The notes beneath the pieces are model-generated. The model was given only the letters and a program-made list of their open reading frames with translations. It was not told the origin of the DNA and ran no database searches. Positions 2,891-47,586 of a DNA stretch of 64,000 nucleotides are shown piece after piece. Location: contig CBFDEM010000020.1 of assembly GCA_965603825.1 (NCBI GenBank), positions 744,001 to 808,000 of the forward strand. The letters run 5' to 3'. Position 1 is the stretch's first letter. Each line of letters opens with the position of its first letter. Origin of the DNA: Blepharisma stoltei ATCC 30299 (taxonomy: Eukaryota; Protista; Ciliophora). The position numbers and the translations under genes were made by a program.

Positions 2891-5695
2891 ATGGCAGGGA
2901 GATTATACAGCTCAGGGATTTTTTTAGAAGGCGGAATCCAGCCAAAGCTCGTCAAAGAGAGGTTCTCCCGAAATGAAGTGCAATGCCAGCGCTGCTATCG
3001 GCCCGAATTCACAACTAACCAGCGAGGCGAAGAAGCAAACGAAAAAATTTGGGAACTTATGGCAGAGTACAAAAACACTGAAAAAGACACCATCCAAAAA
3101 TCAATTGTGAACCACGTCGAATACACGCTTGCAAGGACCAGGTTTAATTTCGATAAGAACACTTGCTTCAGAGCAGTCGCTCTATCTGTCAAAGATAGGC
3201 TGATTGAGAGCTGGAATGATACTCAGCAATCATTTACTGCAGAAGACTCTAAAAGAGTTTACTATATGTCAATTGAGTATCTTATTGGGAGATCTCTACA
3301 AAATGCATTAGTAAACTTAAGCTTGGAGCATGGGTATAGAGAAGCTGTACAAGAAATGGGATTTAAGCTGGAAGAGCTATATGAAGAAGAGGTAGATCCA
3401 GGACTTGGAAATGGAGGACTTGGAAGACTCGCAGCTTGTTTTTTGGACTCAATGGCCACTTTAGATTACCCAGCCTGAGGGTATGGTATTAGATATGACT
3501 ATGGAATATTCCGCCAGATGATCTTAAAAGGCTACCAAGTTGAGATGCCTGATTATTGGCTATCACAAATGAACCCTTGGGAAATTGAACGATCAGATGT
3601 CACATATGATATCCATTTCGGGGGAAGAGTTGAAAAAAGATTAGAAAATGGCATCGAAAAAGCCACCTGGTACCCTGTAGAAACCATTAAAGCTGTGGCT
3701 TATGACAATCCGATACCAGGCTACGACACTTTTAACACCATTAATTTAAGGCTTTGAAAATCTTTTCCGACCAATGAATTTGATTTTCAATCTTTTAACC
3801 AAGGAGATTATTTTAGAGCTATTGAGTCCAGACAAAAAGCAGAATATATCACTTCAGTTCTCTACCCAAATGATAGTACTATAGCTGGCAAAGAACTCAG
3901 GCTTCGTCAGCAGTACTTTTTTTGTAGCGCTTCAATACAAGATATCATGCGCAGATTTTTGAAGCGGAAAAGGTCCTGGGATGAGCTTCCTGAAAAAATT
4001 GCGATTCAGCTAAATGACACACATCCTGCAATTTCCATTCCTGAGCTGCTGATGATCCTTGTTGATAAACATGGATTAGATTGGCCGACGGCGTGGAATA
4101 TTTCTTATAAAATTTTTGGCTACACAAATCATACTGTCATGTCTGAAGCTCTAGAAAAATGGAGTGTAGATCTTTTTGGGAAATTACTGCCAAGGCATTT
4201 GGAGATTATTTACACAATAAACCACATTTTTATGAATCAGATAACAGCCAGGTATCTGAATAGCCCCAAGCTTCACGATATGATGGTCGATATGTCTATG
4301 ATTGAAGAATCAAAGCCCAAAATGGTGCGTATGGCAAATCTTTCTATTATAGGCTCTCATGCTGTCAATGGAGTTGCCAAGCTCCACACAATGCTTCTGA
4401 CTGACAAGCTTTTTGAAAAATTCAATGAGTATTTTCCTAATAAATTCCAAAATAAAACAAATGGGGTCACTCCAAGAAGATGGATCCATTGCTCCAACCC
4501 TGAACTTTCTAATCTTTATACTCGTTATCTTGGCTCTTCCTCATGGCTCACAAACCTACATGAGACAAGAAATCTTTTAACTCACCATGAAGACCCAGAA
4601 TTTAGAAACTCATTTAAAGAAATTAAAATGAAAAATAAAGAAAGACTTGCAAAATGGATTGAAAAAGAATGCGGAGTTATTGTACCTGTGGATGCTATGT
4701 TTGATGTTATGGTAAAAAGATTTCATGAATATAAGCGGCAGCATTTGTTAGCATTTTATATGATTTATAGATATCTTAAGCTAAAAGAAATGACTGTTGA
4801 TGATAGGCAGAGGCAAGTTAAAAGGGTTTTTATGATTGGAGGAAAAGCAGCGCCTGGGTATATTACAGCGAAAAGGATTATCAAGCTGATTACTTCTATT
4901 TCAGAAGTCGTCAATAATGACGAAGATATTGGTGACATAATGAAAGTTATTTTCCTTCCAAACTATAACGTATCCAATGCCCAAGTTATAATTCCCGCTG
5001 CAGATTTGACTCAGCAGATTTCTACTGCAGGGACTGAAGCTTCAGGCACCAGCAATATGAAATTCGTTATGAATGGAGCTATTATTGTAGGAACAATGGA
5101 CGGCGCCAATATCGAAATCGTCCAAGAAATAGGAGAAGAAAATGCTTTTATATTCGGAGCCCGGATTCATGAAGTGGAAGCCTTAAAAACAGCTCATGAA
5201 ACAGCTATACCTGAGCTCCAAAAAGTATTTGATGCAATTAGACGTGGAAATTTTGGAAACCCAAAGGAGCTTTCAGTAATTGCTGATAACGTAGAAAACA
5301 ATGATTATTATCTCCTTAAGCATGATTTTATATCTTATATAGAAATTCAGGACAAAATAGATGAGGTTTATAGAAACTATGACCAGTGGCTAACTATGAC
5401 TATTCTAGGGGCACTGCAAATGGGGAAGTTTTCAAGTGACAGAACGATTACTGATTATGCAGAAGAAATATGGGATATTGAAGCTGTGCATTTACCAAGG
5501 CCTGAAACTCAAATTCCGAAGATCAAAAGCAAGCCACATTTAGTACCGGCAGTTAAAGATATTGATGAAAGAAGACAAGAAAATGCTGAATCACAGGAAA
5601 ATATATTGCAGAGCATCCCTATTAATCAGCTGGAAGCAAGTTTACAAAAGCCTGACGACATAGAGAAGATTCCAAGATACTTTTACACGCTTTAA
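2891..5695 (+). CDS. PYG: Glycogen/starch phosphorylase (GT35)
   Basis: GLGNGGLGRLAACFLDS, A(W=TGA)GYGIRY, LRL(W=TGA), QLNDTHP, KRFHEYKRQ, EASGTSNMK (PLP Lys). One frame through TGA at 3476 and 3755. Confidence 0.97.
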
Positions 5696-41264: not shown

Positions 41265-42386
41265 ATGAATCCCACAGACGATATTGGGAATAGAATTCTT
41301 CGTCTAGTCTTTAACCAGACCAATGTAACCCTTACTCAGTCCAATCTTGTCGCAGGAACTTCTAAAGGTTTCAGAATCGTCCGTCTTGAAGACTGCAAAA
41401 TCACATCTCGTCGTGACAAAGAGTCTGAACTACACTTTCCAGGCGGCTTTACTTGTTTAGCCCCTATGTTTTCTACCCAGCTTATCTGCTTGGTCGGCAG
41501 CCGTGAAAACCCCCGCTACCATCCAAACGTGGTTTATTTTTGGGACGAATACCAAGTAGATATGAAAGGCGAAATCAGATTTAGGTCAGAAGTCAAAAAT
41601 GTGCTTATCAGACGAGATAAAGTCGTCATTATTTTACAAAACATGGTAATTATTACTTAGACATATGTATATGAGCTTAATAATCTCAAGCCAGTTGCTT
41701 CTATTTCTACAATTGATAACACAAATGGGGTTGGCTCGATTTCTTATGATAAAGATAGGTTCGTTTTAGGGACTTTGGATACAAAGCCAGGATGGATTAG
41801 AATAGAAAACTTTTCAGGTGGAGGGTTTAAGACTGCGTCAATTCATGAAAATCCGATAGCAATCCTAAGTATTGATTTTAGTGGGACATATGGAGCTACT
41901 GCAAGTGAACAGGGGACTATTATAAGGGTTTTTGATTGTATTACTTTAGATATATTGCATGAGCTTAGAAGAGGTAGCAGTGCTGCCAAAATTTCGGCCC
42001 TTGTGTTTAGCCCTGATCATAGCTTTCTCATTTCTTCTAGCAATAGAGCTACAATTCATGCTTGAAATATTAAAAATTTCCAATCAGTATCTGTAAGTGG
42101 AGCTATTAGTAAATTATTGCCGACTTATTTTCAGTACCAACGCAGCTTTGCCAAGCTGAATTTGCCGCCTGAGGTAGCTTGAACTTGCCCAACTACAATT
42201 GATGAAGGCCCAAAAGCATGCTTTGCGAATGAGACTGACTTTTTTGTTGCGCATTTGGATGGGAACTTATATAAGTGCCAAATCAATGAGACTCAGAACA
42301 CTATAACTGTGCTAGATACTAAGCCATTTTTAAATTTCAATGAAACTATTGTAGAAGGTGAGAGACAATGGACTTCTTTTGAATAA
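41265..42386 (+). CDS. PROPPIN/WIPI3-4 (ATG18/HSV2 family) WD40 protein
   Basis: FNQ..LVAGTSKGF, VYFWD, ATASEQGTIIRVF, ELRRG phosphoinositide motif; two 15-nt introns; TAA at 42384. Confidence 0.92.
41325..41339 (+). other. 15-nt in-frame, stop-free intron
   Basis: GTAACCCTTACTCAG; removal restores FNQ-x-x-S-x-L-x-x-GT spacing of the ATG18 family. Confidence 0.75.
41646..41660 (+). other. 15-nt intron
   Basis: GTAATTATTACTTAG; in-frame TAG if retained. Confidence 0.92.
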
Positions 42387-42410: not shown

Positions 42411-43739
42411 TTATGCTGATTCTGTTAATTTAGTTTGCTTATATAAAAGATAGCCATACAGCTTTGACGGCCCTTCACTTTTAGCTATTCCTGCATACTC
42501 CAGCCCATCACGCACAATAAACGCCATACATCCTGCTAATGGGGAACTATCTTTATGATAATTTGGGTTTAATTTTCCATGATGCCCTCTAGCTAATTGT
42601 TCACATTTCTCTATATTTTCAAATGAGAAATCAAAAGTACTCGCTTTTTCTTCAATCATCTCGCTCAATGTTTTTCCATCATGGGCATCTTTATTTCTAA
42701 TATCAGCTAAATATGTTTGACACTGAGCCCAAGCTTCTTCATTACTTTCTGGAAGAGATTGGCCAGCAAGCTGGAAGAATAATCTAAATATTAAAATTGT
42801 GTCTACTGGGGCAAGCTGTGTAAGGTAAAAAAGCTCTTCTTCGATAATATTGATCACTTTAAGGGCTTCTTTGGATTTTGATAAAAGTGTGAATGGAGGA
42901 GGGTCAGGAATTTCAGAGCCATTTTCTGTGAGCTGTTTGAGGGCTTCTTGCACTTCTGCAAGAGTTGAATATGAAGGCCTGTCAATTTTTATTTCAGCAA
43001 CTGGCTCTTCTTTCTTTTCTTCTTCTGCTTTTTTGGTTACTTCTTTTTTCTTTGTAGGGCTAACTTTCTTTTTTTCTTCTTTCTTGTCTTCTTTCTTTTT
43101 TGGCTCCTTTTTCTCTTCTTCTCCAGACTTTTTCTTTTCTTCTTCTTTTTTCTTTTTCTTTTCTTCAATCTGCTTATTCTTTTCTTCCAACTCTTTTCTC
43201 TTTTTCTCAGCTTCCTGGGCTTGTTTTGCCTTAAACTCTTCTTTTTTCTTTGCTTCTTCTTCAACTTTTTTCTTTTTTGCTTCTTCTTTTTTCTTATTTT
43301 CCTCTTCTTTAGCCTTTTCTTTGGCTTCGCGCTTTTTCTCCTCCTGTTCTTTTTTCTTTTCTAGTTCTTCTTGTTTTTTCTTTTTGATTTCATCTTGATG
43401 TTTTTTGATTTCTAAATCTTTTTGCGCTTTGAATTCAGCTTTTTTCTTGGCTTCTTCTTCTTTTTCTTTTTTCACCTCTTCAGTTAAGACTTCTTTTCCT
43501 AAAGAGACTTGTGCAGTTTTAGGCCGCTTTGGGTTATCTGGAGAAGAATGATCTTCGACATTCGGCTTTGGTCTGACTTTGCCAGCTGATCCAGTTCTTT
43601 TTTCAGCTTTCTTAGAAGCTTCTAATTTGTTGATTAGATCTTCGAGATAAATTGTTTGAGCGTGAAAAGCTTCCTGGAGACCTGAAAGCTTTTCAGTAAT
43701 CAATTCATCAACTACTCCTTTGATTGCTGTCCAATCCAT
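42411..43739 (-). CDS. K/E-rich single-alpha-helix protein with C-terminal dynein-stalk MTBD-like domain
   Basis: Likely start MDWTAIKG (ATG at 43739, after AT-rich leader); about 150 aa of EEEK/KKKE; globular C-terminal domain with dynein MTBD-like spacing. Confidence 0.75.
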   Translation of the reverse strand: MDWTAIKGVVDELITEKLSGLQEAFHAQTIYLEDLINKLEASKKAEKRTGSAGKVRPKPNVEDHSSPDNPKRPKTAQVSLGKEVLTEEVKKEKEEEAKKKAEFKAQKDLEIKKHQDEIKKKKQEELEKKKEQEEKKREAKEKAKEEENKKKEEAKKKKVEEEAKKKEEFKAKQAQEAEKKRKELEEKNKQIEEKKKKKEEEKKKSGEEEKKEPKKKEDKKEEKKKVSPTKKKEVTKKAEEEKKEEPVAEIKIDRPSYSTLAEVQEALKQLTENGSEIPDPPPFTLLSKSKEALKVINIIEEELFYLTQLAPVDTILIFRLFFQLAGQSLPESNEEAWAQCQTYLADIRNKDAHDGKTLSEMIEEKASTFDFSFENIEKCEQLARGHHGKLNPNYHKDSSPLAGCMAFIVRDGLEYAGIAKSEGPSKLYGYLLYKQTKLTESA

Positions 43740-44640
43740 ATTTATTATGAATTTTTTGAGACTAAAATAGTCCAATGACTGTATTTTTGATGATTTATAA
43801 GGCATCCGTGTAGATTCCTAGGGTAATAATATTTTCCAAAGTCTTCATAAACAGACTCCTTAAATTACCTTAAAAAATACAATTTTTAATTATTTTTTAT
43901 AGTTAGAACTTGTTCAGATAAAAACTTTTAAAAATTACTTGTTTTATTTTATTATCATTACGTTATTTTAACACAGATTTTTCAGCATTTCTCTTTTTGA
44001 TCTTCATAGCTGCATAAATAAATTCTTTATTAATTGCCAATTTCCTCTACTTTTTTCCTCCATTCTTGATCCATTCCACAAATGTCTGAGAATAAGTGCA
44101 ATTTCACGCATCATGAATCTCTCCCTAATTATTTCTTCAATTACACTACTTTCCTTTAATCTCTATAAAAATTCCACTCTAATATTAGTTTAGATTTATT
44201 TTATATTAAGTAATCAGCATTATATTTATATAATAAAAATTTGTTTTTTATTGAAATTACATTTTGCAGTAGTAATATAGGTCAATAAACTTTAAGGATT
44301 ATCAAAAATTGCCAAATAAATATTCATCTTAATCATAAAGAGAACAAGATCTATGCTGTTGAATTCTCATCAAATCACAATTTTCAGATATTAAATTTCA
44401 GGTAAACAATTTTGGATATCAATTGATTCTTAAGTCTAAAAATTTTCTGAGAATGAAAACCATTCTAACATCTATACTTTATGAAGGTTATAATAGCAGA
44501 ATAAAATTATTATATTAAATAAAAAGCATATTTAGATAAACTGAAATCTATAATTAATCGACAAAATTAGCAAGAAAACATATTTATTGCTGCTAGTTGC
44601 TCTAATTCATTTTAATAGTATAAAAGATACTGTAAAGCAT

Positions 44641-44793
44641 TTAGATTCTTCTTTTTCTTTACTTCATCTTCGGCTTTTCTTCCCTGAAGTCCAGTCCATA
44701 TTTTATTATTAATTTTTAAACTAATAAATTCCGATGACTGTATTTTTACTTTTTTAATTGGGCAGCCTAAGCAAAGGCTATCTAAATAATATT
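44641..44793 (-). pseudogene. Deleted relic copy of the 42411..43739 gene (upstream region + MDWT start fused to an internal fragment)
   Basis: 44691-44793 aligns with 43731-43833 (ccaRtccata..ttattat..atgactgtattttt..ggca..taataatatt); 44641-44682 aligns with 43231-43272. Confidence 0.7.
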
Positions 44794-44843
44794 GAGCTCT
44801 TTATACCTATTAATAAAAAATTAATTATAAAAAAGGATTTCTC

Positions 44844-45626
44844 CTATCTCTCTGAAATATGATTTTTCTTGTATAAAAGATAACCATAAAGCTTTGTAGG
44901 TCCTTCCCCTTTTGCAACGCCTCCATATACTAAAGCATCGCGAACTATAAACGCAATAATTCCAGCTATTATGCAAGTATTTGAATGAAAATTTGGATCT
45001 AATTTCGAATGATGCCCTTTAACCAACGCACCACATCTGCTTATATTGTTAAAAGAAAAATCAAAAGTATTGATTTTTTCTTCAAGTATCTCACTCAACA
45101 ATTTTCCTTCAAGAGCTGCTTTGTTTCAAGTATCAATAAAAAACGCTCTGCACTGTGCCGAAGCTTCATCAATTTTAAACGGAAGTGGTTGGCCTAAAAG
45201 CTGGAAAAAAAGACTGAAAATTGGTAGTGATTCTATTTGGAAAGGCGTATTAAGGCAAAATAGCTCTTCTCCTAAAAAGTTCATAAGTTTAAGCACTTCT
45301 TTTGATTTTGATGATAATGAGAATGGAGGCGGATCTGAAGTATCGCGTCCTTCTTCAATGAATTGTTTTAATCCATCTGTTATTTCTTTTAGTGTTGAAT
45401 AGGAGGGTTCAGCAGTTTCCACAATTTTTGACTCTTCTTTTTGATTTATTTTGTTTGACTTTTTCTGGTTATTTATTTTTGTACGTGGTTTCTGGTGTGC
45501 ATGGATTATGTTGTTTTGTTTTTTTTGGCTTTCATGTTTTTGCTTGATTTTAGGCTCTGTAGTTTTCTTTGACTCTTCTAAAACTTTTTTCTTCGGAATT
45601 ACTGCTTTATTCGTTTTTTTATTCAT
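44844..45626 (-). CDS. Shorter paralog of the 42411..43739 gene (MTBD-like domain)
   Basis: PSYSTL..DPPPF.L.SKSKE..EELF.L..FFQL.GQ.LP..TFDFSF.NI..GHH.KL.PN..AFIVRD..LYGYLLYK shared; TGA at 45126 read as Trp. Confidence 0.75.
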
Positions 45627-46092: not shown

Positions 46093-47586
46093 TTACTTTC
46101 TCTTCGTACTGCTCAAGAATGGCATATTATATATAAAATCAGACAAGCAAAAGAATGCTTGCATTTTTCTCCTATAAATAAACTTTTCCAGTCTCGCATG
46201 GCATATTTTATAAGCAGTTTTCTGGCTTTGTGAAGGTGTTGGGTACTCAAACCAAACCGAACTTTCCGGCTCTTTGGTAGCTGGCTCAATAACACTTAAA
46301 TTGCATTTTCTATTATTCTCAAAAGCCCCAAAGGTCCCTGTCATCGTCGGACTATGCAAAATAGAGCTATTCTGTATTTCTTCTTTACTAAAATCAAACG
46401 TTAACGACTGTTCTCCATCATTTCCTAGCGCTTTTTTAAAATTTCCCATACATAATTTCAATCTTTCTTTAAAAATTCCATCAACTATTTTCAATCCTTT
46501 TTTTTGCTCTGCAATACTGCATGCTTTTGATGGATTTTTATTATGCTGTTTTGGGGGTTTTGGAGGTAAAAGCTCGCTGAAATCTAGCTTTGGGACTTTT
46601 ACAGCATTTGATTTTGGCATGCCTTCTAAGCTTAACTCAATATCAAGCTCAAGCCCTTTTGGAAGCTCTGTTATATCAGGGTTAAACTCAAATGATGCTT
46701 CTTCTTTGGGCTTTTTTGACCCAATGGATTCATTGAATCTCAATGTATGCTTTGGCTCGATTTGTCTACTTGACGCAATTCCAGGGGAATCTAATGAAGA
46801 TTCATAGAAATCCAGCTTTATTTCACTGATTTCATTCATATCTGATAAGTTTTTCTTTTTCGAACGCGGAGATGCGACTATTTGATCCTCAGAGTACATT
46901 ACAAGGCTTAATTCATTGTCGTGAATTATCTCTTTTGGCTCTGGAGACCCTCCTTCTTGATAATATAATGACCTTTTTGAAGCATTATGCTCAGTTACTG
47001 CACATGATGTGGTTATATTGCAATCTCTTATCATAGGCTGAGTTCTTACTAATTTTTCTGGTTTTGATGGCAAAATTTGTAAGATTTTTTCGTGAAATCT
47101 TGGTGAGAGCTCTTCTTTGGTGGAACTTGTAAGAAGTGTCAAGGCTACAGCATTGCAATGGCTGCATTTAGTAAATGCTAGAGGATTGTAATTTTGTACT
47201 TGGGTTTTCTCGAGTTTCCGCATAGAATCTCTGGTTCTTTTAAAAACCAGTTTTTCTAAAATTAAGCTTAAAATTTTTATTTCTTTGGAATTATTTTTGG
47301 GATGCTTCCATTCTTTGTTGTATTTTTCATAAAAAGAGAATTCTTTGTTTGCTGCAAATGTACGGTTGTGTCGACTTGTACTGAGAGCATCTAGCTTTTT
47401 TTGCAAAAATGGACTTACGTTACCCAGTTTTTCTTGCAAATTTAGCTTGAAAACTTGTTTGCCTGCTACTTTTGAATTTTGAAAAAGCTTGTTAACTCTT
47501 TCAACAAAACTGTTTTCAGGGATTATATTTTCTGATAGATTTTCTTTTGGCTTCAAAACTCTTATATTGCGTCTATCAGTCGTCAT
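46093..47586 (-). CDS. Hypothetical protein
   Basis: 497-aa uninterrupted ORF. Confidence 0.7.
   Translation of the reverse strand: MTTDRRNIRVLKPKENLSENIIPENSFVERVNKLFQNSKVAGKQVFKLNLQEKLGNVSPFLQKKLDALSTSRHNRTFAANKEFSFYEKYNKEWKHPKNNSKEIKILSLILEKLVFKRTRDSMRKLEKTQVQNYNPLAFTKCSHCNAVALTLLTSSTKEELSPRFHEKILQILPSKPEKLVRTQPMIRDCNITTSCAVTEHNASKRSLYYQEGGSPEPKEIIHDNELSLVMYSEDQIVASPRSKKKNLSDMNEISEIKLDFYESSLDSPGIASSRQIEPKHTLRFNESIGSKKPKEEASFEFNPDITELPKGLELDIELSLEGMPKSNAVKVPKLDFSELLPPKPPKQHNKNPSKACSIAEQKKGLKIVDGIFKERLKLCMGNFKKALGNDGEQSLTFDFSKEEIQNSSILHSPTMTGTFGAFENNRKCNLSVIEPATKEPESSVWFEYPTPSQSQKTAYKICHARLEKFIYRRKMQAFFCLSDFIYNMPFLSSTKRK

What the first reader, a model, noticed from the sequence alone, without database searches (positions are those of the whole stretch)
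42411..45626. Motor-less proteins with a stand-alone dynein-stalk microtubule-binding-domain (MTBD)-like module on a K/E helical arm
Seen: two tandem paralogs share a ~130-aa C-terminal domain (about 42488-42882 and 44921-45312). The longer one has ~150 aa of EEEK/KKKE repeats typical of a single alpha helix. No AAA+ ring is present. Recalled knowledge: the metazoan cytoplasmic dynein MTBD reads roughly [69 protein letters not shown]. The domain here reads ALKVI-NIIEEELFYLTQLAP-VDTILIFRLFFQLAGQ..AWAQC..FDFS..LNPNYHKDSSPLAGCMAFIVRDGLEYA. Both ends align without gaps (P, L-x-G, W-x-Q, N..S...G-x-M......L-x-Y-A). Inference: a dynein MTBD detached from its motor and reused as an ATP-independent microtubule tether, cross-linker or dynein competitor, for example in ciliate cortical arrays.
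Basis: partly seen in the sequence, partly recalled or inferred. Interest (0 to 1): 0.8.

Follow-up and report, generated by a model that had tools for sequence, protein, structure and literature searches.

The report
Motor-less dynein-tip-like ciliate proteins
Two neighbouring Blepharisma genes belong to a large, unannotated ciliate protein family whose tail end is predicted to fold like the microtubule-gripping tip of the dynein motor but has no motor attached; whether it still binds microtubules is untested.

Summary
The window is Blepharisma stoltei macronuclear DNA (UGA = Trp). It holds two tandem minus-strand genes, of 442 aa (42414-43739) and 260 aa (44847-45626, one in-frame TGA). They share a ~190-aa C-terminal domain (55% identity). 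Only the longer gene has a ~156-aa K/E-rich arm with single-alpha-helix composition. Neither has an AAA+ domain.

The dynein reading of the fold holds. AlphaFold2 models (pLDDT 83 and 93) searched against 48,161 PDB representatives return only dynein microtubule-binding domains (MTBDs) in the top five (Z 10.7-7.6). Unrelated chains score 3.6 or less. Profile-profile comparison with Blepharisma's own dynein stalks aligns 146-150 columns in the same order (probability 53-58%, score 38 against 15.4 +/- 1.9 for block-shuffled controls). Pfam PF12777 does not match, and no Pfam family covers the domain.

The family is large: 350 cluster representatives, seven paralogs in this genome, and members in Stentor.

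Microtubule binding itself is not shown. The dynein contact helices H1 and H3 are acidic here, and the core net charge is -7 (gene 1) against a mean of +2.7 in the Blepharisma dyneins.

The scan has already noted other, canonical motor-less stalk/MTBD proteins elsewhere in this genome, but not this family. No paper describing it was found.

The parts
42411..43739 (-). Gene 1: 442-aa protein plus TAA stop. The ORF extends upstream to an ATG at 43805, but the family alignment puts the start at 43739 (MDWTAIKG...).
   Evidence: P0001
43614..43739 (-). Gene 1 aa 1-42: conserved N-terminal amphipathic helix (M-D/E-W... motif), acidic (pI 4.3). Present in most full-length family members. Proposed docking or dimerisation element (inferred).
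43488..43613 (-). Gene 1 aa 43-84: basic, Pro/Gly-containing linker (net +6) with an invariant R-P-x-T motif.
43020..43487 (-). Gene 1 aa 85-240: K/E-rich arm (62 K, 47 E, net +14) with ER/K single-alpha-helix composition.
42414..42983 (-). Gene 1 aa 253-442: conserved C-terminal domain. It comprises an upstream helix (CC1-like), a Pro-rich kink loop, a six-helix MTBD-like bundle and a ~15-aa terminal helix (CC2-like).
42444..42896 (-). Gene 1 aa 282-432: the part that superposes on solved dynein MTBDs (model residues 38-188 against mouse dynein 3282-3410).
44844..45626 (-). Gene 2: 260-aa paralog plus TAG stop. It lacks the N-terminal helix and the K/E arm.
   Evidence: P0003
45126..45128 (-). 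In-frame TGA of gene 2, read as Trp167 (the only Trp in the protein). Paralogs have R/K in this column.
45411..45626 (-). Gene 2 aa 1-72: basic K/Q/N-rich N-terminal region (net +14, pI 10.3), probably disordered.
44847..45410 (-). Gene 2 aa 73-260: the same MTBD-like domain. It carries Ser at two of the family's most conserved positions (R75 and W93 in model numbering).

Best explanation
The two genes are members of a Pfam-less ciliate protein family. Its C-terminal domain is a very divergent relative of the dynein microtubule-binding domain: part of stalk helix CC1, the Pro kink, six helices H1-H6 and a stub of CC2. There is no return coiled coil and no AAA+ motor.

In the typical member (gene 1) the parts run in this order:
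- a short conserved N-terminal helix;
- a basic linker;
- a 150-250-residue ER/K-type single alpha helix, about 20-35 nm if fully helical;
- the dynein-tip-like head.

The most likely role is a passive, ATP-independent cytoskeletal strut or tether. The N-terminal helix would dock or dimerise. The charged helix would act as a spacer of fixed length. The head would bind the microtubule lattice, or a lattice-associated partner, in the cortical and ciliary microtubule arrays of ciliates.

Gene 2 is a head-only variant with a basic tail.

Shown here: gene structures, family membership, predicted fold, collinear profile similarity to dynein stalks, and absence of a motor.

Inferred: common descent with dynein (about 0.8), microtubule binding (about 0.45), and the strut role.
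For: Gene structure and family:
- Seven paralogs in this genome share the architecture.
- 350 cluster representatives match at E<=1e-3 and 197 at <=1e-10. The domain is almost always at the C-terminus.
- Stentor coeruleus has members.

Predicted fold:
- AF2 model from 6 paralogs: pLDDT 83, pTM 0.83.
- AF2 model from 61 diverse members: pLDDT 93.3, pTM 0.89.
- Exhaustive alignment to 48,161 PDB representatives puts dynein MTBDs in ranks 1-5: 3err Z 10.7 (127 aa, 3.4 A), 5ayh 10.1, 8i3j 9.9, 6l4p 8.7, 2rr7 7.6. Unrelated chains score <=3.6.
- A second look adds yeast and microtubule-bound mouse MTBDs at Z 8.3-8.7.
- Foldseek's top hits are also dynein MTBDs, probability 0.99-1.0.

Profile similarity:
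- hhalign of the family against Blepharisma dynein stalks gives probability 53-58%, P 1e-4, 146-150 collinear columns.
- The score is 38.2, against 15.4 +/- 1.9 (maximum 18.5) for 60 block shuffles and 13.7 for the reversed alignment.
- Shared landmarks: A-x-x-A-L at the end of CC1, the Pro after H1, the Trp in H3, the F-D...N-I motif, and the aromatic end of H6.

Arm: single-alpha-helix composition.

Precedent: the same genome encodes a canonical stand-alone MTBD mini-protein (PF12777, 64 bits).
Against: - PF12777 does not match either protein, or any of 61 family members.
- Profile-to-sequence scores against dynein stalks are at most about 5 bits.
- A family profile finds no PDB sequence.
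- Foldseek E-values are only 0.02-0.3.
- The tool itself warns that Z below about 13 can be a common arrangement for helical bundles.
- The MTBD-like core is net -7 in gene 1 and -1 in gene 2. The family mean is 0.2. Blepharisma dynein MTBD cores average +2.7, and 16 of 19 are positive.
- The H1 and H3 equivalents are acidic in both genes.
Confidence: 0.5

Rival explanations
1. The domain descends from the dynein MTBD but no longer binds microtubules. It has been re-used as a helical-bundle adaptor for another cortical partner, such as another filament system, a membrane-skeleton protein or a dynein light-chain-like protein. Any lattice affinity would come from the basic linker and arm.
For: - The fold and profile similarity are the same as for the main explanation.
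- The core is acidic or neutral, and the H1 and H3 equivalents are acidic.
- Family-conserved basic residues sit instead in H2 (R75), H6 (K166) and the H6-CC2 loop (K178, R182).
- The basic segments lie outside the head: the gene 1 linker (+6) and arm (+14), and the gene 2 N-terminus (+14).
Against: - No alternative partner is indicated by any result.
- Ranks 6-8 of the fold search, after the dyneins, are all chains from microtubule-bound cryo-EM assemblies (9ya2_L, 9fqr_Xl, 9e5c_2e; Z 4.3-5.5).
- Net charge across the family ranges from -10 to +10, so many members are basic.
Confidence: 0.3
2. The resemblance to the dynein MTBD is convergent. The domain is an unrelated small helical bundle that happens to share the arrangement, and nothing about microtubules follows from it.
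For: - No HMM-level match to PF12777 or to dynein sequences.
- Foldseek E-values are above 0.01.
- Sequence identity in the structural alignments is only 10-19%.
- Helical bundles often give middling Z (tool note).
Against: - All nine best chains are dynein MTBDs from four organisms, and scores then drop from Z 7.6 to <=3.6 for unrelated folds.
- The profile-profile score lies about 12 SD above block-shuffled controls, over about 146 collinear columns.
- The score rose when the family alignment was deepened from 6 to 61 sequences: probability 9.6% to 53%.
- The alignment includes the CC1 kink and the CC2 stub, not only the bundle.
Confidence: 0.12
3. Gene 2 is a decaying tandem duplicate (a pseudogene) and not a working head-only variant.
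For: - It has an in-frame TGA.
- It has lost the N-terminal helix and the K/E arm.
- It has Ser at two of the most conserved family positions, R75 and W93.
Against: - UGA encodes Trp in B. stoltei (PMC9942806).
- The frame is otherwise open, and the rest of the domain is conserved (53-55% identity to gene 1).
- A transcriptome-derived ortholog (P0031, source MMETSP) has the same N-terminal region and the same two Ser residues. Its called ORF ends exactly where gene 2 has the TGA. This suggests that the codon and the substitutions are old and that the gene is transcribed in a relative. The nucleotides of that transcript were not seen.
Confidence: 0.1

Closest known systems
Dynein heavy chain stalk tip / microtubule-binding domain (Pfam PF12777 'MT'; structures 3ERR, 5AYH, 8I3J, 6L4P, 2RR7, 6RZB, 6KJO)
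   Same: - Predicted six-helix bundle entered through a kinked CC1 helix and left through a CC2 helix.
- 123-136 residues superpose at 3.0-4.7 A, Z 7.6-10.7.
- The profile alignment is collinear and shares the Pro after H1, the Trp in H3 and the F-D...N-I motif.
   Different: - No PF12777 match.
- No long antiparallel coiled-coil stalk: CC2 is a ~15-residue stub that ends the protein.
- No AAA+ ring.
- The H1 and H3 contact helices are acidic, not basic.
- The head hangs on a single charged helix instead of a two-stranded stalk, so there is no obvious way for registry sliding to switch affinity.
Canonical stand-alone stalk-tip/MTBD mini-proteins of Blepharisma (for example G000:C46:697643-698212, 225 aa; see also the scan's notes s1-634280 and s1-646657)
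   Same: Motor-less proteins built around an MTBD-type head, in the same genome. The hhalign register against the family is the same.
   Different: - The mini-protein matches PF12777 at 64 bits and keeps both coiled-coil strands.
- The present family is far more divergent and has a different architecture (N-terminal helix, ER/K arm).
- The present family is much larger.
ER/K single-alpha-helix (SAH) spacers, as in myosin VI/X, caldesmon and MAP7-type charged helices (comparison from general knowledge)
   Same: Long Pro/Gly-free stretch that is 60-89% charged, with dense i/i+4 K-E pairs and very few hydrophobic residues.
   Different: The helicity and monomeric state were not measured. Here the SAH leads into a dynein-type head instead of a myosin lever or a MAP repeat.
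Toxoplasma intraconoidal-microtubule MAP, chain 9YA2_L (probably ICMAP2, by residue numbering and resolved length; PMC12819142)
   Same: A globular helical domain of a long alveolate MAP, solved bound to the microtubule surface. It is the best non-dynein match to the model (Z 5.5, 124 aa, 4.1 A).
   Different: - The match is much weaker than to dynein.
- A family profile finds no sequence similarity in the PDB.
- It binds between protofilaments as a dimer.
- The paper does not call it dynein-like.
- The chain's identity is my inference.

Membership tests
Dynein stalk/MTBD (Pfam PF12777) | Sequence match to the PF12777 profile above its gathering score | tested here: not met
   - No hit, even at E<=10, for either protein or the isolated domain.
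- The six-frame genome scan with PF12777 finds 22 loci, none at this locus or its paralogs.
- 0 of 61 family members match.
Dynein stalk/MTBD (Pfam PF12777) | Six-helix bundle (H1-H6) between the CC1 and CC2 helices | tested here: met
   - AF2 models at pLDDT 83 and 93.
- The top nine structural matches are all dynein MTBDs, Z 7.6-10.7, with 123-136 aligned residues.
- This is a prediction, not an experimental structure.
Dynein stalk/MTBD (Pfam PF12777) | Detectable common ancestry by profile-profile comparison | tested here: inconclusive
   - hhalign probability 53-58%, P 1e-4, 146-150 collinear columns.
- The score is about 12 SD above block-shuffled controls.
- This is suggestive, but below the ~90% usually taken as proof.
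Dynein stalk/MTBD (Pfam PF12777) | Long antiparallel coiled-coil stalk linking the tip to AAA4/AAA5, plus an AAA+ ring | tested here: not met
   - The protein ends about 15 residues into the CC2-like helix.
- The arm has SAH composition, not a heptad pattern.
- No AAA+ domain in the proteins or the neighbouring genes.
Dynein stalk/MTBD (Pfam PF12777) | Basic tubulin-contact surface on H1/H3/H6 | tested here: not met
   - Net charge of the H1 and H3 equivalents is -3 and -2 in gene 1, and -2 and -2 in gene 2.
- The core is net -7 (gene 1) and -1 (gene 2), against a mean of +2.7 in 19 Blepharisma dynein MTBDs.
- This is a charge count only. Individual contact residues were not mapped on coordinates.
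Dynein stalk/MTBD (Pfam PF12777) | Binds microtubules | not testable with these tools
   Needs co-sedimentation, TIRF or localisation.
ER/K single alpha helix | At least 100 residues rich in E/K/R with i/i+4 salt-bridge pairs, few hydrophobic residues and no Pro/Gly | tested here: met
   Gene 1 aa 85-240: 61-89% charged, 0-18% hydrophobic, no Pro/Gly over aa 85-196, and 8-14 i/i+4 pairs per 28 aa through about aa 224.
ER/K single alpha helix | Stable monomeric helix in solution | not testable with these tools
   Needs CD, SAXS or AUC.

The most novel reading that the evidence does not exclude
Ciliates carry a large, previously unrecognised family of microtubule-associated proteins made by detaching the dynein stalk tip from its motor and mounting it on a single charged helix. 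These passive dynein heads would occupy or compete for dynein's footprint on tubulin. They would act as fixed-length struts or brakes in cortical ribbons and cilia. That would make them a third class of dynein-derived protein, beside the motors and the canonical mini-stalks also found in this genome.
Probability: 0.35. Interest if true: 0.78.

Novelty: new variant of a known kind. Interest (0 to 1): 0.62.

Why it matters
The dynein MTBD is treated as a part of the dynein heavy chain, with its affinity set by sliding of the two stalk strands. A large motor-less family with the same head on a one-stranded arm would matter in several ways:

- It would show that the head can evolve and work, or be re-used, as an independent module.
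- It would give a natural head with no two-stranded stalk to slide, useful for studying how stalk registry controls binding.
- It would name candidate components of the poorly characterised bridges in heterotrich cortical microtubule ribbons.
- It would assign a fold to at least 350 protein clusters that currently have no annotation.

Tried and rejected
- **Pfam.** Scans of both proteins, the isolated domain, 61 family members and 10 long members found no consistent family. The only hits were DUF285 in P0114 and a B-box in P0140.
- **PDB by sequence.** phmmer and two profiles found nothing significant.
- **ESM Atlas.** Neither the feature search nor the shape search gave a usable hit.
- **Word-indexed protein search.** It found only close paralogs, Stentor proteins and unnamed metagenome proteins.
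- **Contig look-ups.** They gave sample names only: lake, bioreactor and rumen-type metagenomes, and the Stentor assembly. The taxonomic range beyond heterotrichs is therefore inferred, not shown.
- **Expression.** I worked with 42414-43022, 43103-43739 or P0001:245-442 only. Local composition counts were the only use of the full protein.
- **A decayed third tandem copy.** The 1-kb spacer holds an 'MDWT' word and weak collinear tblastn fragments. This is rejected: the family HMM scores -1.0 bits there, against -0.5 +/- 1.8 for shuffles.
- **Spacer RNAs.** No tRNA or Rfam match.
- **Literature.** Searches for MTBD-like, dynein-like stand-alone domains and the Stentor locus tags found no description.
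It was not used. Real dynein sequences from this genome and solved structures were used instead.
Full report
**Source and genes**

The window's assembly is 41.46 Mb in 64 contigs. A paralog carries the database name 'Blepharisma stoltei'. This fits the published macronuclear genome of B. stoltei ATCC 30299: 41 Mbp, 64 telomere-to-telomere contigs, 15-16-nt introns, UGA = Trp (PMC9942806).

On the minus strand lie two genes.
- Gene 1 is open from 43805. All five aligned paralogs and many distant relatives begin M-D/E-W, so the likely start is 43739. That gives 442 aa, ending at the TAA at 42411-42413.
- Gene 2 (44847-45626, TAG stop) is one 260-aa frame if the TGA at 45126-45128 is Trp. The protein database holds exactly this product (P0003).

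The flanking genes are a PROPPIN-type WD40 gene and a 497-aa ORF with no Pfam family. No AAA+ domain is nearby.

**The observation**

The two proteins share a ~190-aa C-terminal domain (55% identity, E 1e-60).

Gene 1 has, in order:
- a conserved acidic N-terminal helix (aa 1-42);
- a basic linker with an invariant R-P-x-T motif (aa 43-84);
- a K/E arm (aa 85-240; 62 K, 47 E; 61-89% charged; 0-18% hydrophobic; Pro/Gly-free over aa 85-196; 8-14 i/i+4 opposite-charge pairs per 28 residues through about aa 224);
- the C-terminal domain.

That composition is typical of an ER/K single alpha helix, not of a heptad coiled coil. At 0.15 nm per residue it would span about 23 nm (inference).

Gene 2 has only a basic 72-aa N-terminus (net +14) before the domain.

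**The family**

The genome has seven paralogs, five of them with the gene-1 architecture.

A profile of six domains, run against 1.84 billion cluster representatives, finds 350 proteins at E<=1e-3, 197 at <=1e-10 and 27 at <=1e-30. The domain is almost always at the extreme C-terminus of 400-900-aa proteins. Examples are P0004 (match to 497 of 501), P0006 (574 of 578) and P0124 (887 of 904). Many of these share the N-terminal helix and a highly charged middle.

Named members are Stentor coeruleus hypothetical proteins SteCoe_23422 and SteCoe_24209. A divergent member lies on assembly GCA_001970955.1, whose contig prefix I recognise as Stentor (from memory). The others come from lake, bioreactor and rumen-type metagenomes. 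AT-rich members that are free of in-frame stops are compatible with other ciliate classes, but this is not shown.

No Pfam family covers the domain in any of 61 members.

**Is it a dynein MTBD?**

Sequence-profile tests fail:
- PF12777 matches neither protein.
- PF12777 finds 22 other loci in this genome, but not this family.
- The family HMM scores at most about 5 bits on dynein stalks.

Structure prediction says yes:
- With only six paralogs as alignment, AF2 gives pLDDT 83 and pTM 0.83.
- With 61 diverse members it gives pLDDT 93.3 and pTM 0.89.
- An exhaustive alignment of either model to 48,161 PDB representatives puts dynein MTBDs in ranks 1-5. For the better model these are 3err Z 10.7 (127 aa, 3.4 A, 19% identity), 5ayh 10.1, 8i3j 9.9, 6l4p 8.7 and 2rr7 7.6.
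- Three chains of microtubule-bound cryo-EM assemblies follow (Z 5.5-4.3). Unrelated folds score <=3.6.
- A second look at Foldseek's list adds yeast low- and high-affinity MTBDs and the microtubule-bound mouse MTBD at Z 8.3-8.7. These values are tied, so no affinity state can be read from the model.
- Foldseek also ranks dynein MTBDs first (probability 0.99-1.0), though with weak E-values of 0.02-0.3.

Profile-profile comparison agrees and improves with depth:
- Six paralogs against six Blepharisma dynein stalks: probability 9.6%, P 0.003.
- 61 members against 6 or 19 stalks: probability 53-58%, P 1e-4, 146-150 collinear columns.
- The score of 38.2 compares with 15.4 +/- 1.9 (maximum 18.5) for 60 block-shuffled stalk alignments, and 13.7 for the reversed one.

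The alignment runs from CC1 through the CC1 proline kink, which here is a Pro-rich loop (PDPPPF in gene 1). It continues through the A-x-x-A-L end of CC1, the Pro after H1, the Trp of H3, an F-D...(D/E)-N-I motif and the aromatic end of H6, and into the first turns of CC2.

I take common descent as likely (about 0.8), with convergence as a minority rival.

**What differs from dynein**

The CC2-like helix is about 15 residues long and ends the protein, so there is no two-stranded stalk and no route for registry-coupled affinity control.

The tubulin-facing helices are not basic:
- H1 and H3 equivalents carry net -3 and -2 in gene 1, and -2 and -2 in gene 2.
- The core is net -7 (gene 1) and -1 (gene 2). 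The family mean is 0.2, range -10 to +10.
- Nineteen Blepharisma dynein MTBD cores average +2.7, and 16 of 19 are positive.

Family-conserved basic residues lie in H2 (R75), H6 (K/R166, followed by an invariant acidic residue) and the H6-CC2 loop (K178, R182). This is a charge count on an alignment, not a mapped interface. It still lowers confidence that the dynein binding mode is kept. The strongly basic parts are the linker, the arm and the gene-2 N-terminus.

**Mechanism proposed**

- The N-terminal helix docks or dimerises (inferred from its conservation).
- The ER/K helix is a spacer of fixed length (inferred from composition).
- The head binds the microtubule lattice or a lattice-bound partner (inferred from the fold).

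This would make a passive strut or tether. Gene 2 would be a head-only form. It has Ser at two of the most conserved positions (R75, W93). A transcriptome-derived ortholog (P0031, MMETSP) has the same two changes, and its called ORF stops exactly where gene 2 has the TGA. That argues for an old, transcribed and maintained variant, not a pseudogene.

**Context in this genome and in the literature**

The scan's earlier notes report other motor-less stalk/MTBD proteins elsewhere in this genome. Independently, I found one canonical example at G000:C46:697643-698212. It is 225 aa, matches PF12777 at 64 bits, and lies between an LRR gene and a kinase gene. Its hhalign register against the family is the same, though weak (P 0.05). 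Blepharisma therefore has both canonical and highly diverged motor-less heads.

The best non-dynein structural match, 9ya2 chain L, is probably the globular microtubule-bound domain of Toxoplasma ICMAP2. That is my inference from residue numbers and resolved length. The paper does not compare it with dynein.

Literature searches found no description of stand-alone dynein-MTBD-like proteins or of the Stentor genes.

**Limits**

- All structural statements rest on predicted models.
- The taxonomic range beyond Blepharisma and Stentor is inferred from sample types.

**Verdict**

The structural interpretation is supported. The functional interpretation is open, with one piece of evidence against a conserved dynein-type interface. 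It is a new, large and unannotated variant of a known fold in a new architecture.

Noticed in passing
window 41265-42386 (+): A PROPPIN/WIPI-type WD40 gene (PF21032, E 5.5e-13 on one exon). The frame is broken several times, probably by the tiny introns typical of this genome.
   Followed up: partly
window 46093-47586 (-): A 497-aa ORF directly upstream of gene 2 with no Pfam family.
   Followed up: partly
window 43806-44846: A 1-kb spacer of 24% GC between the two paralogs, long for this compact genome. It holds an 'MDWT' word on the gene strand (about 44679-44699) and weak collinear tblastn fragments. The family HMM gives no signal above shuffles, and there is no tRNA or Rfam hit.
   Followed up: yes
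G000:C46:697643-698212 (-) = L032:2135-2809 (-): A canonical stand-alone dynein stalk-tip/MTBD mini-protein (225 aa, PF12777 64 bits), flanked by an LRR gene and a protein-kinase gene. No motor is present.
   Followed up: partly
PDB 9ya2 chain L (residues 1208-1457): A microtubule-bound globular domain from the Toxoplasma intraconoidal microtubule structure, probably ICMAP2. It is the best non-dynein match to the model (Z 5.5). The paper does not note any dynein-like fold. It may be another motor-less MTBD-type head in an alveolate.
   Followed up: partly
P0114 (811 aa), P0140 (686 aa): Metagenomic family members that combine the C-terminal head with other domains: DUF285/BspA-like repeats (E 7e-30) in P0114 and a B-box zinc finger in P0140. 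The head has therefore been shuffled into other architectures.
   Followed up: no
P0031 (MMETSP transcript, 196 aa): An ortholog of gene 2 whose standard-code ORF call ends exactly at the position of gene 2's in-frame TGA. This looks like a stop-codon-reassignment truncation in a public transcriptome annotation.
   Followed up: no
L007 = G000:C53:736649-737086 (-): A seventh paralog (450 aa, P0017) also has one in-frame TGA. It has a less charged, more hydrophobic middle region than the others.
   Followed up: no
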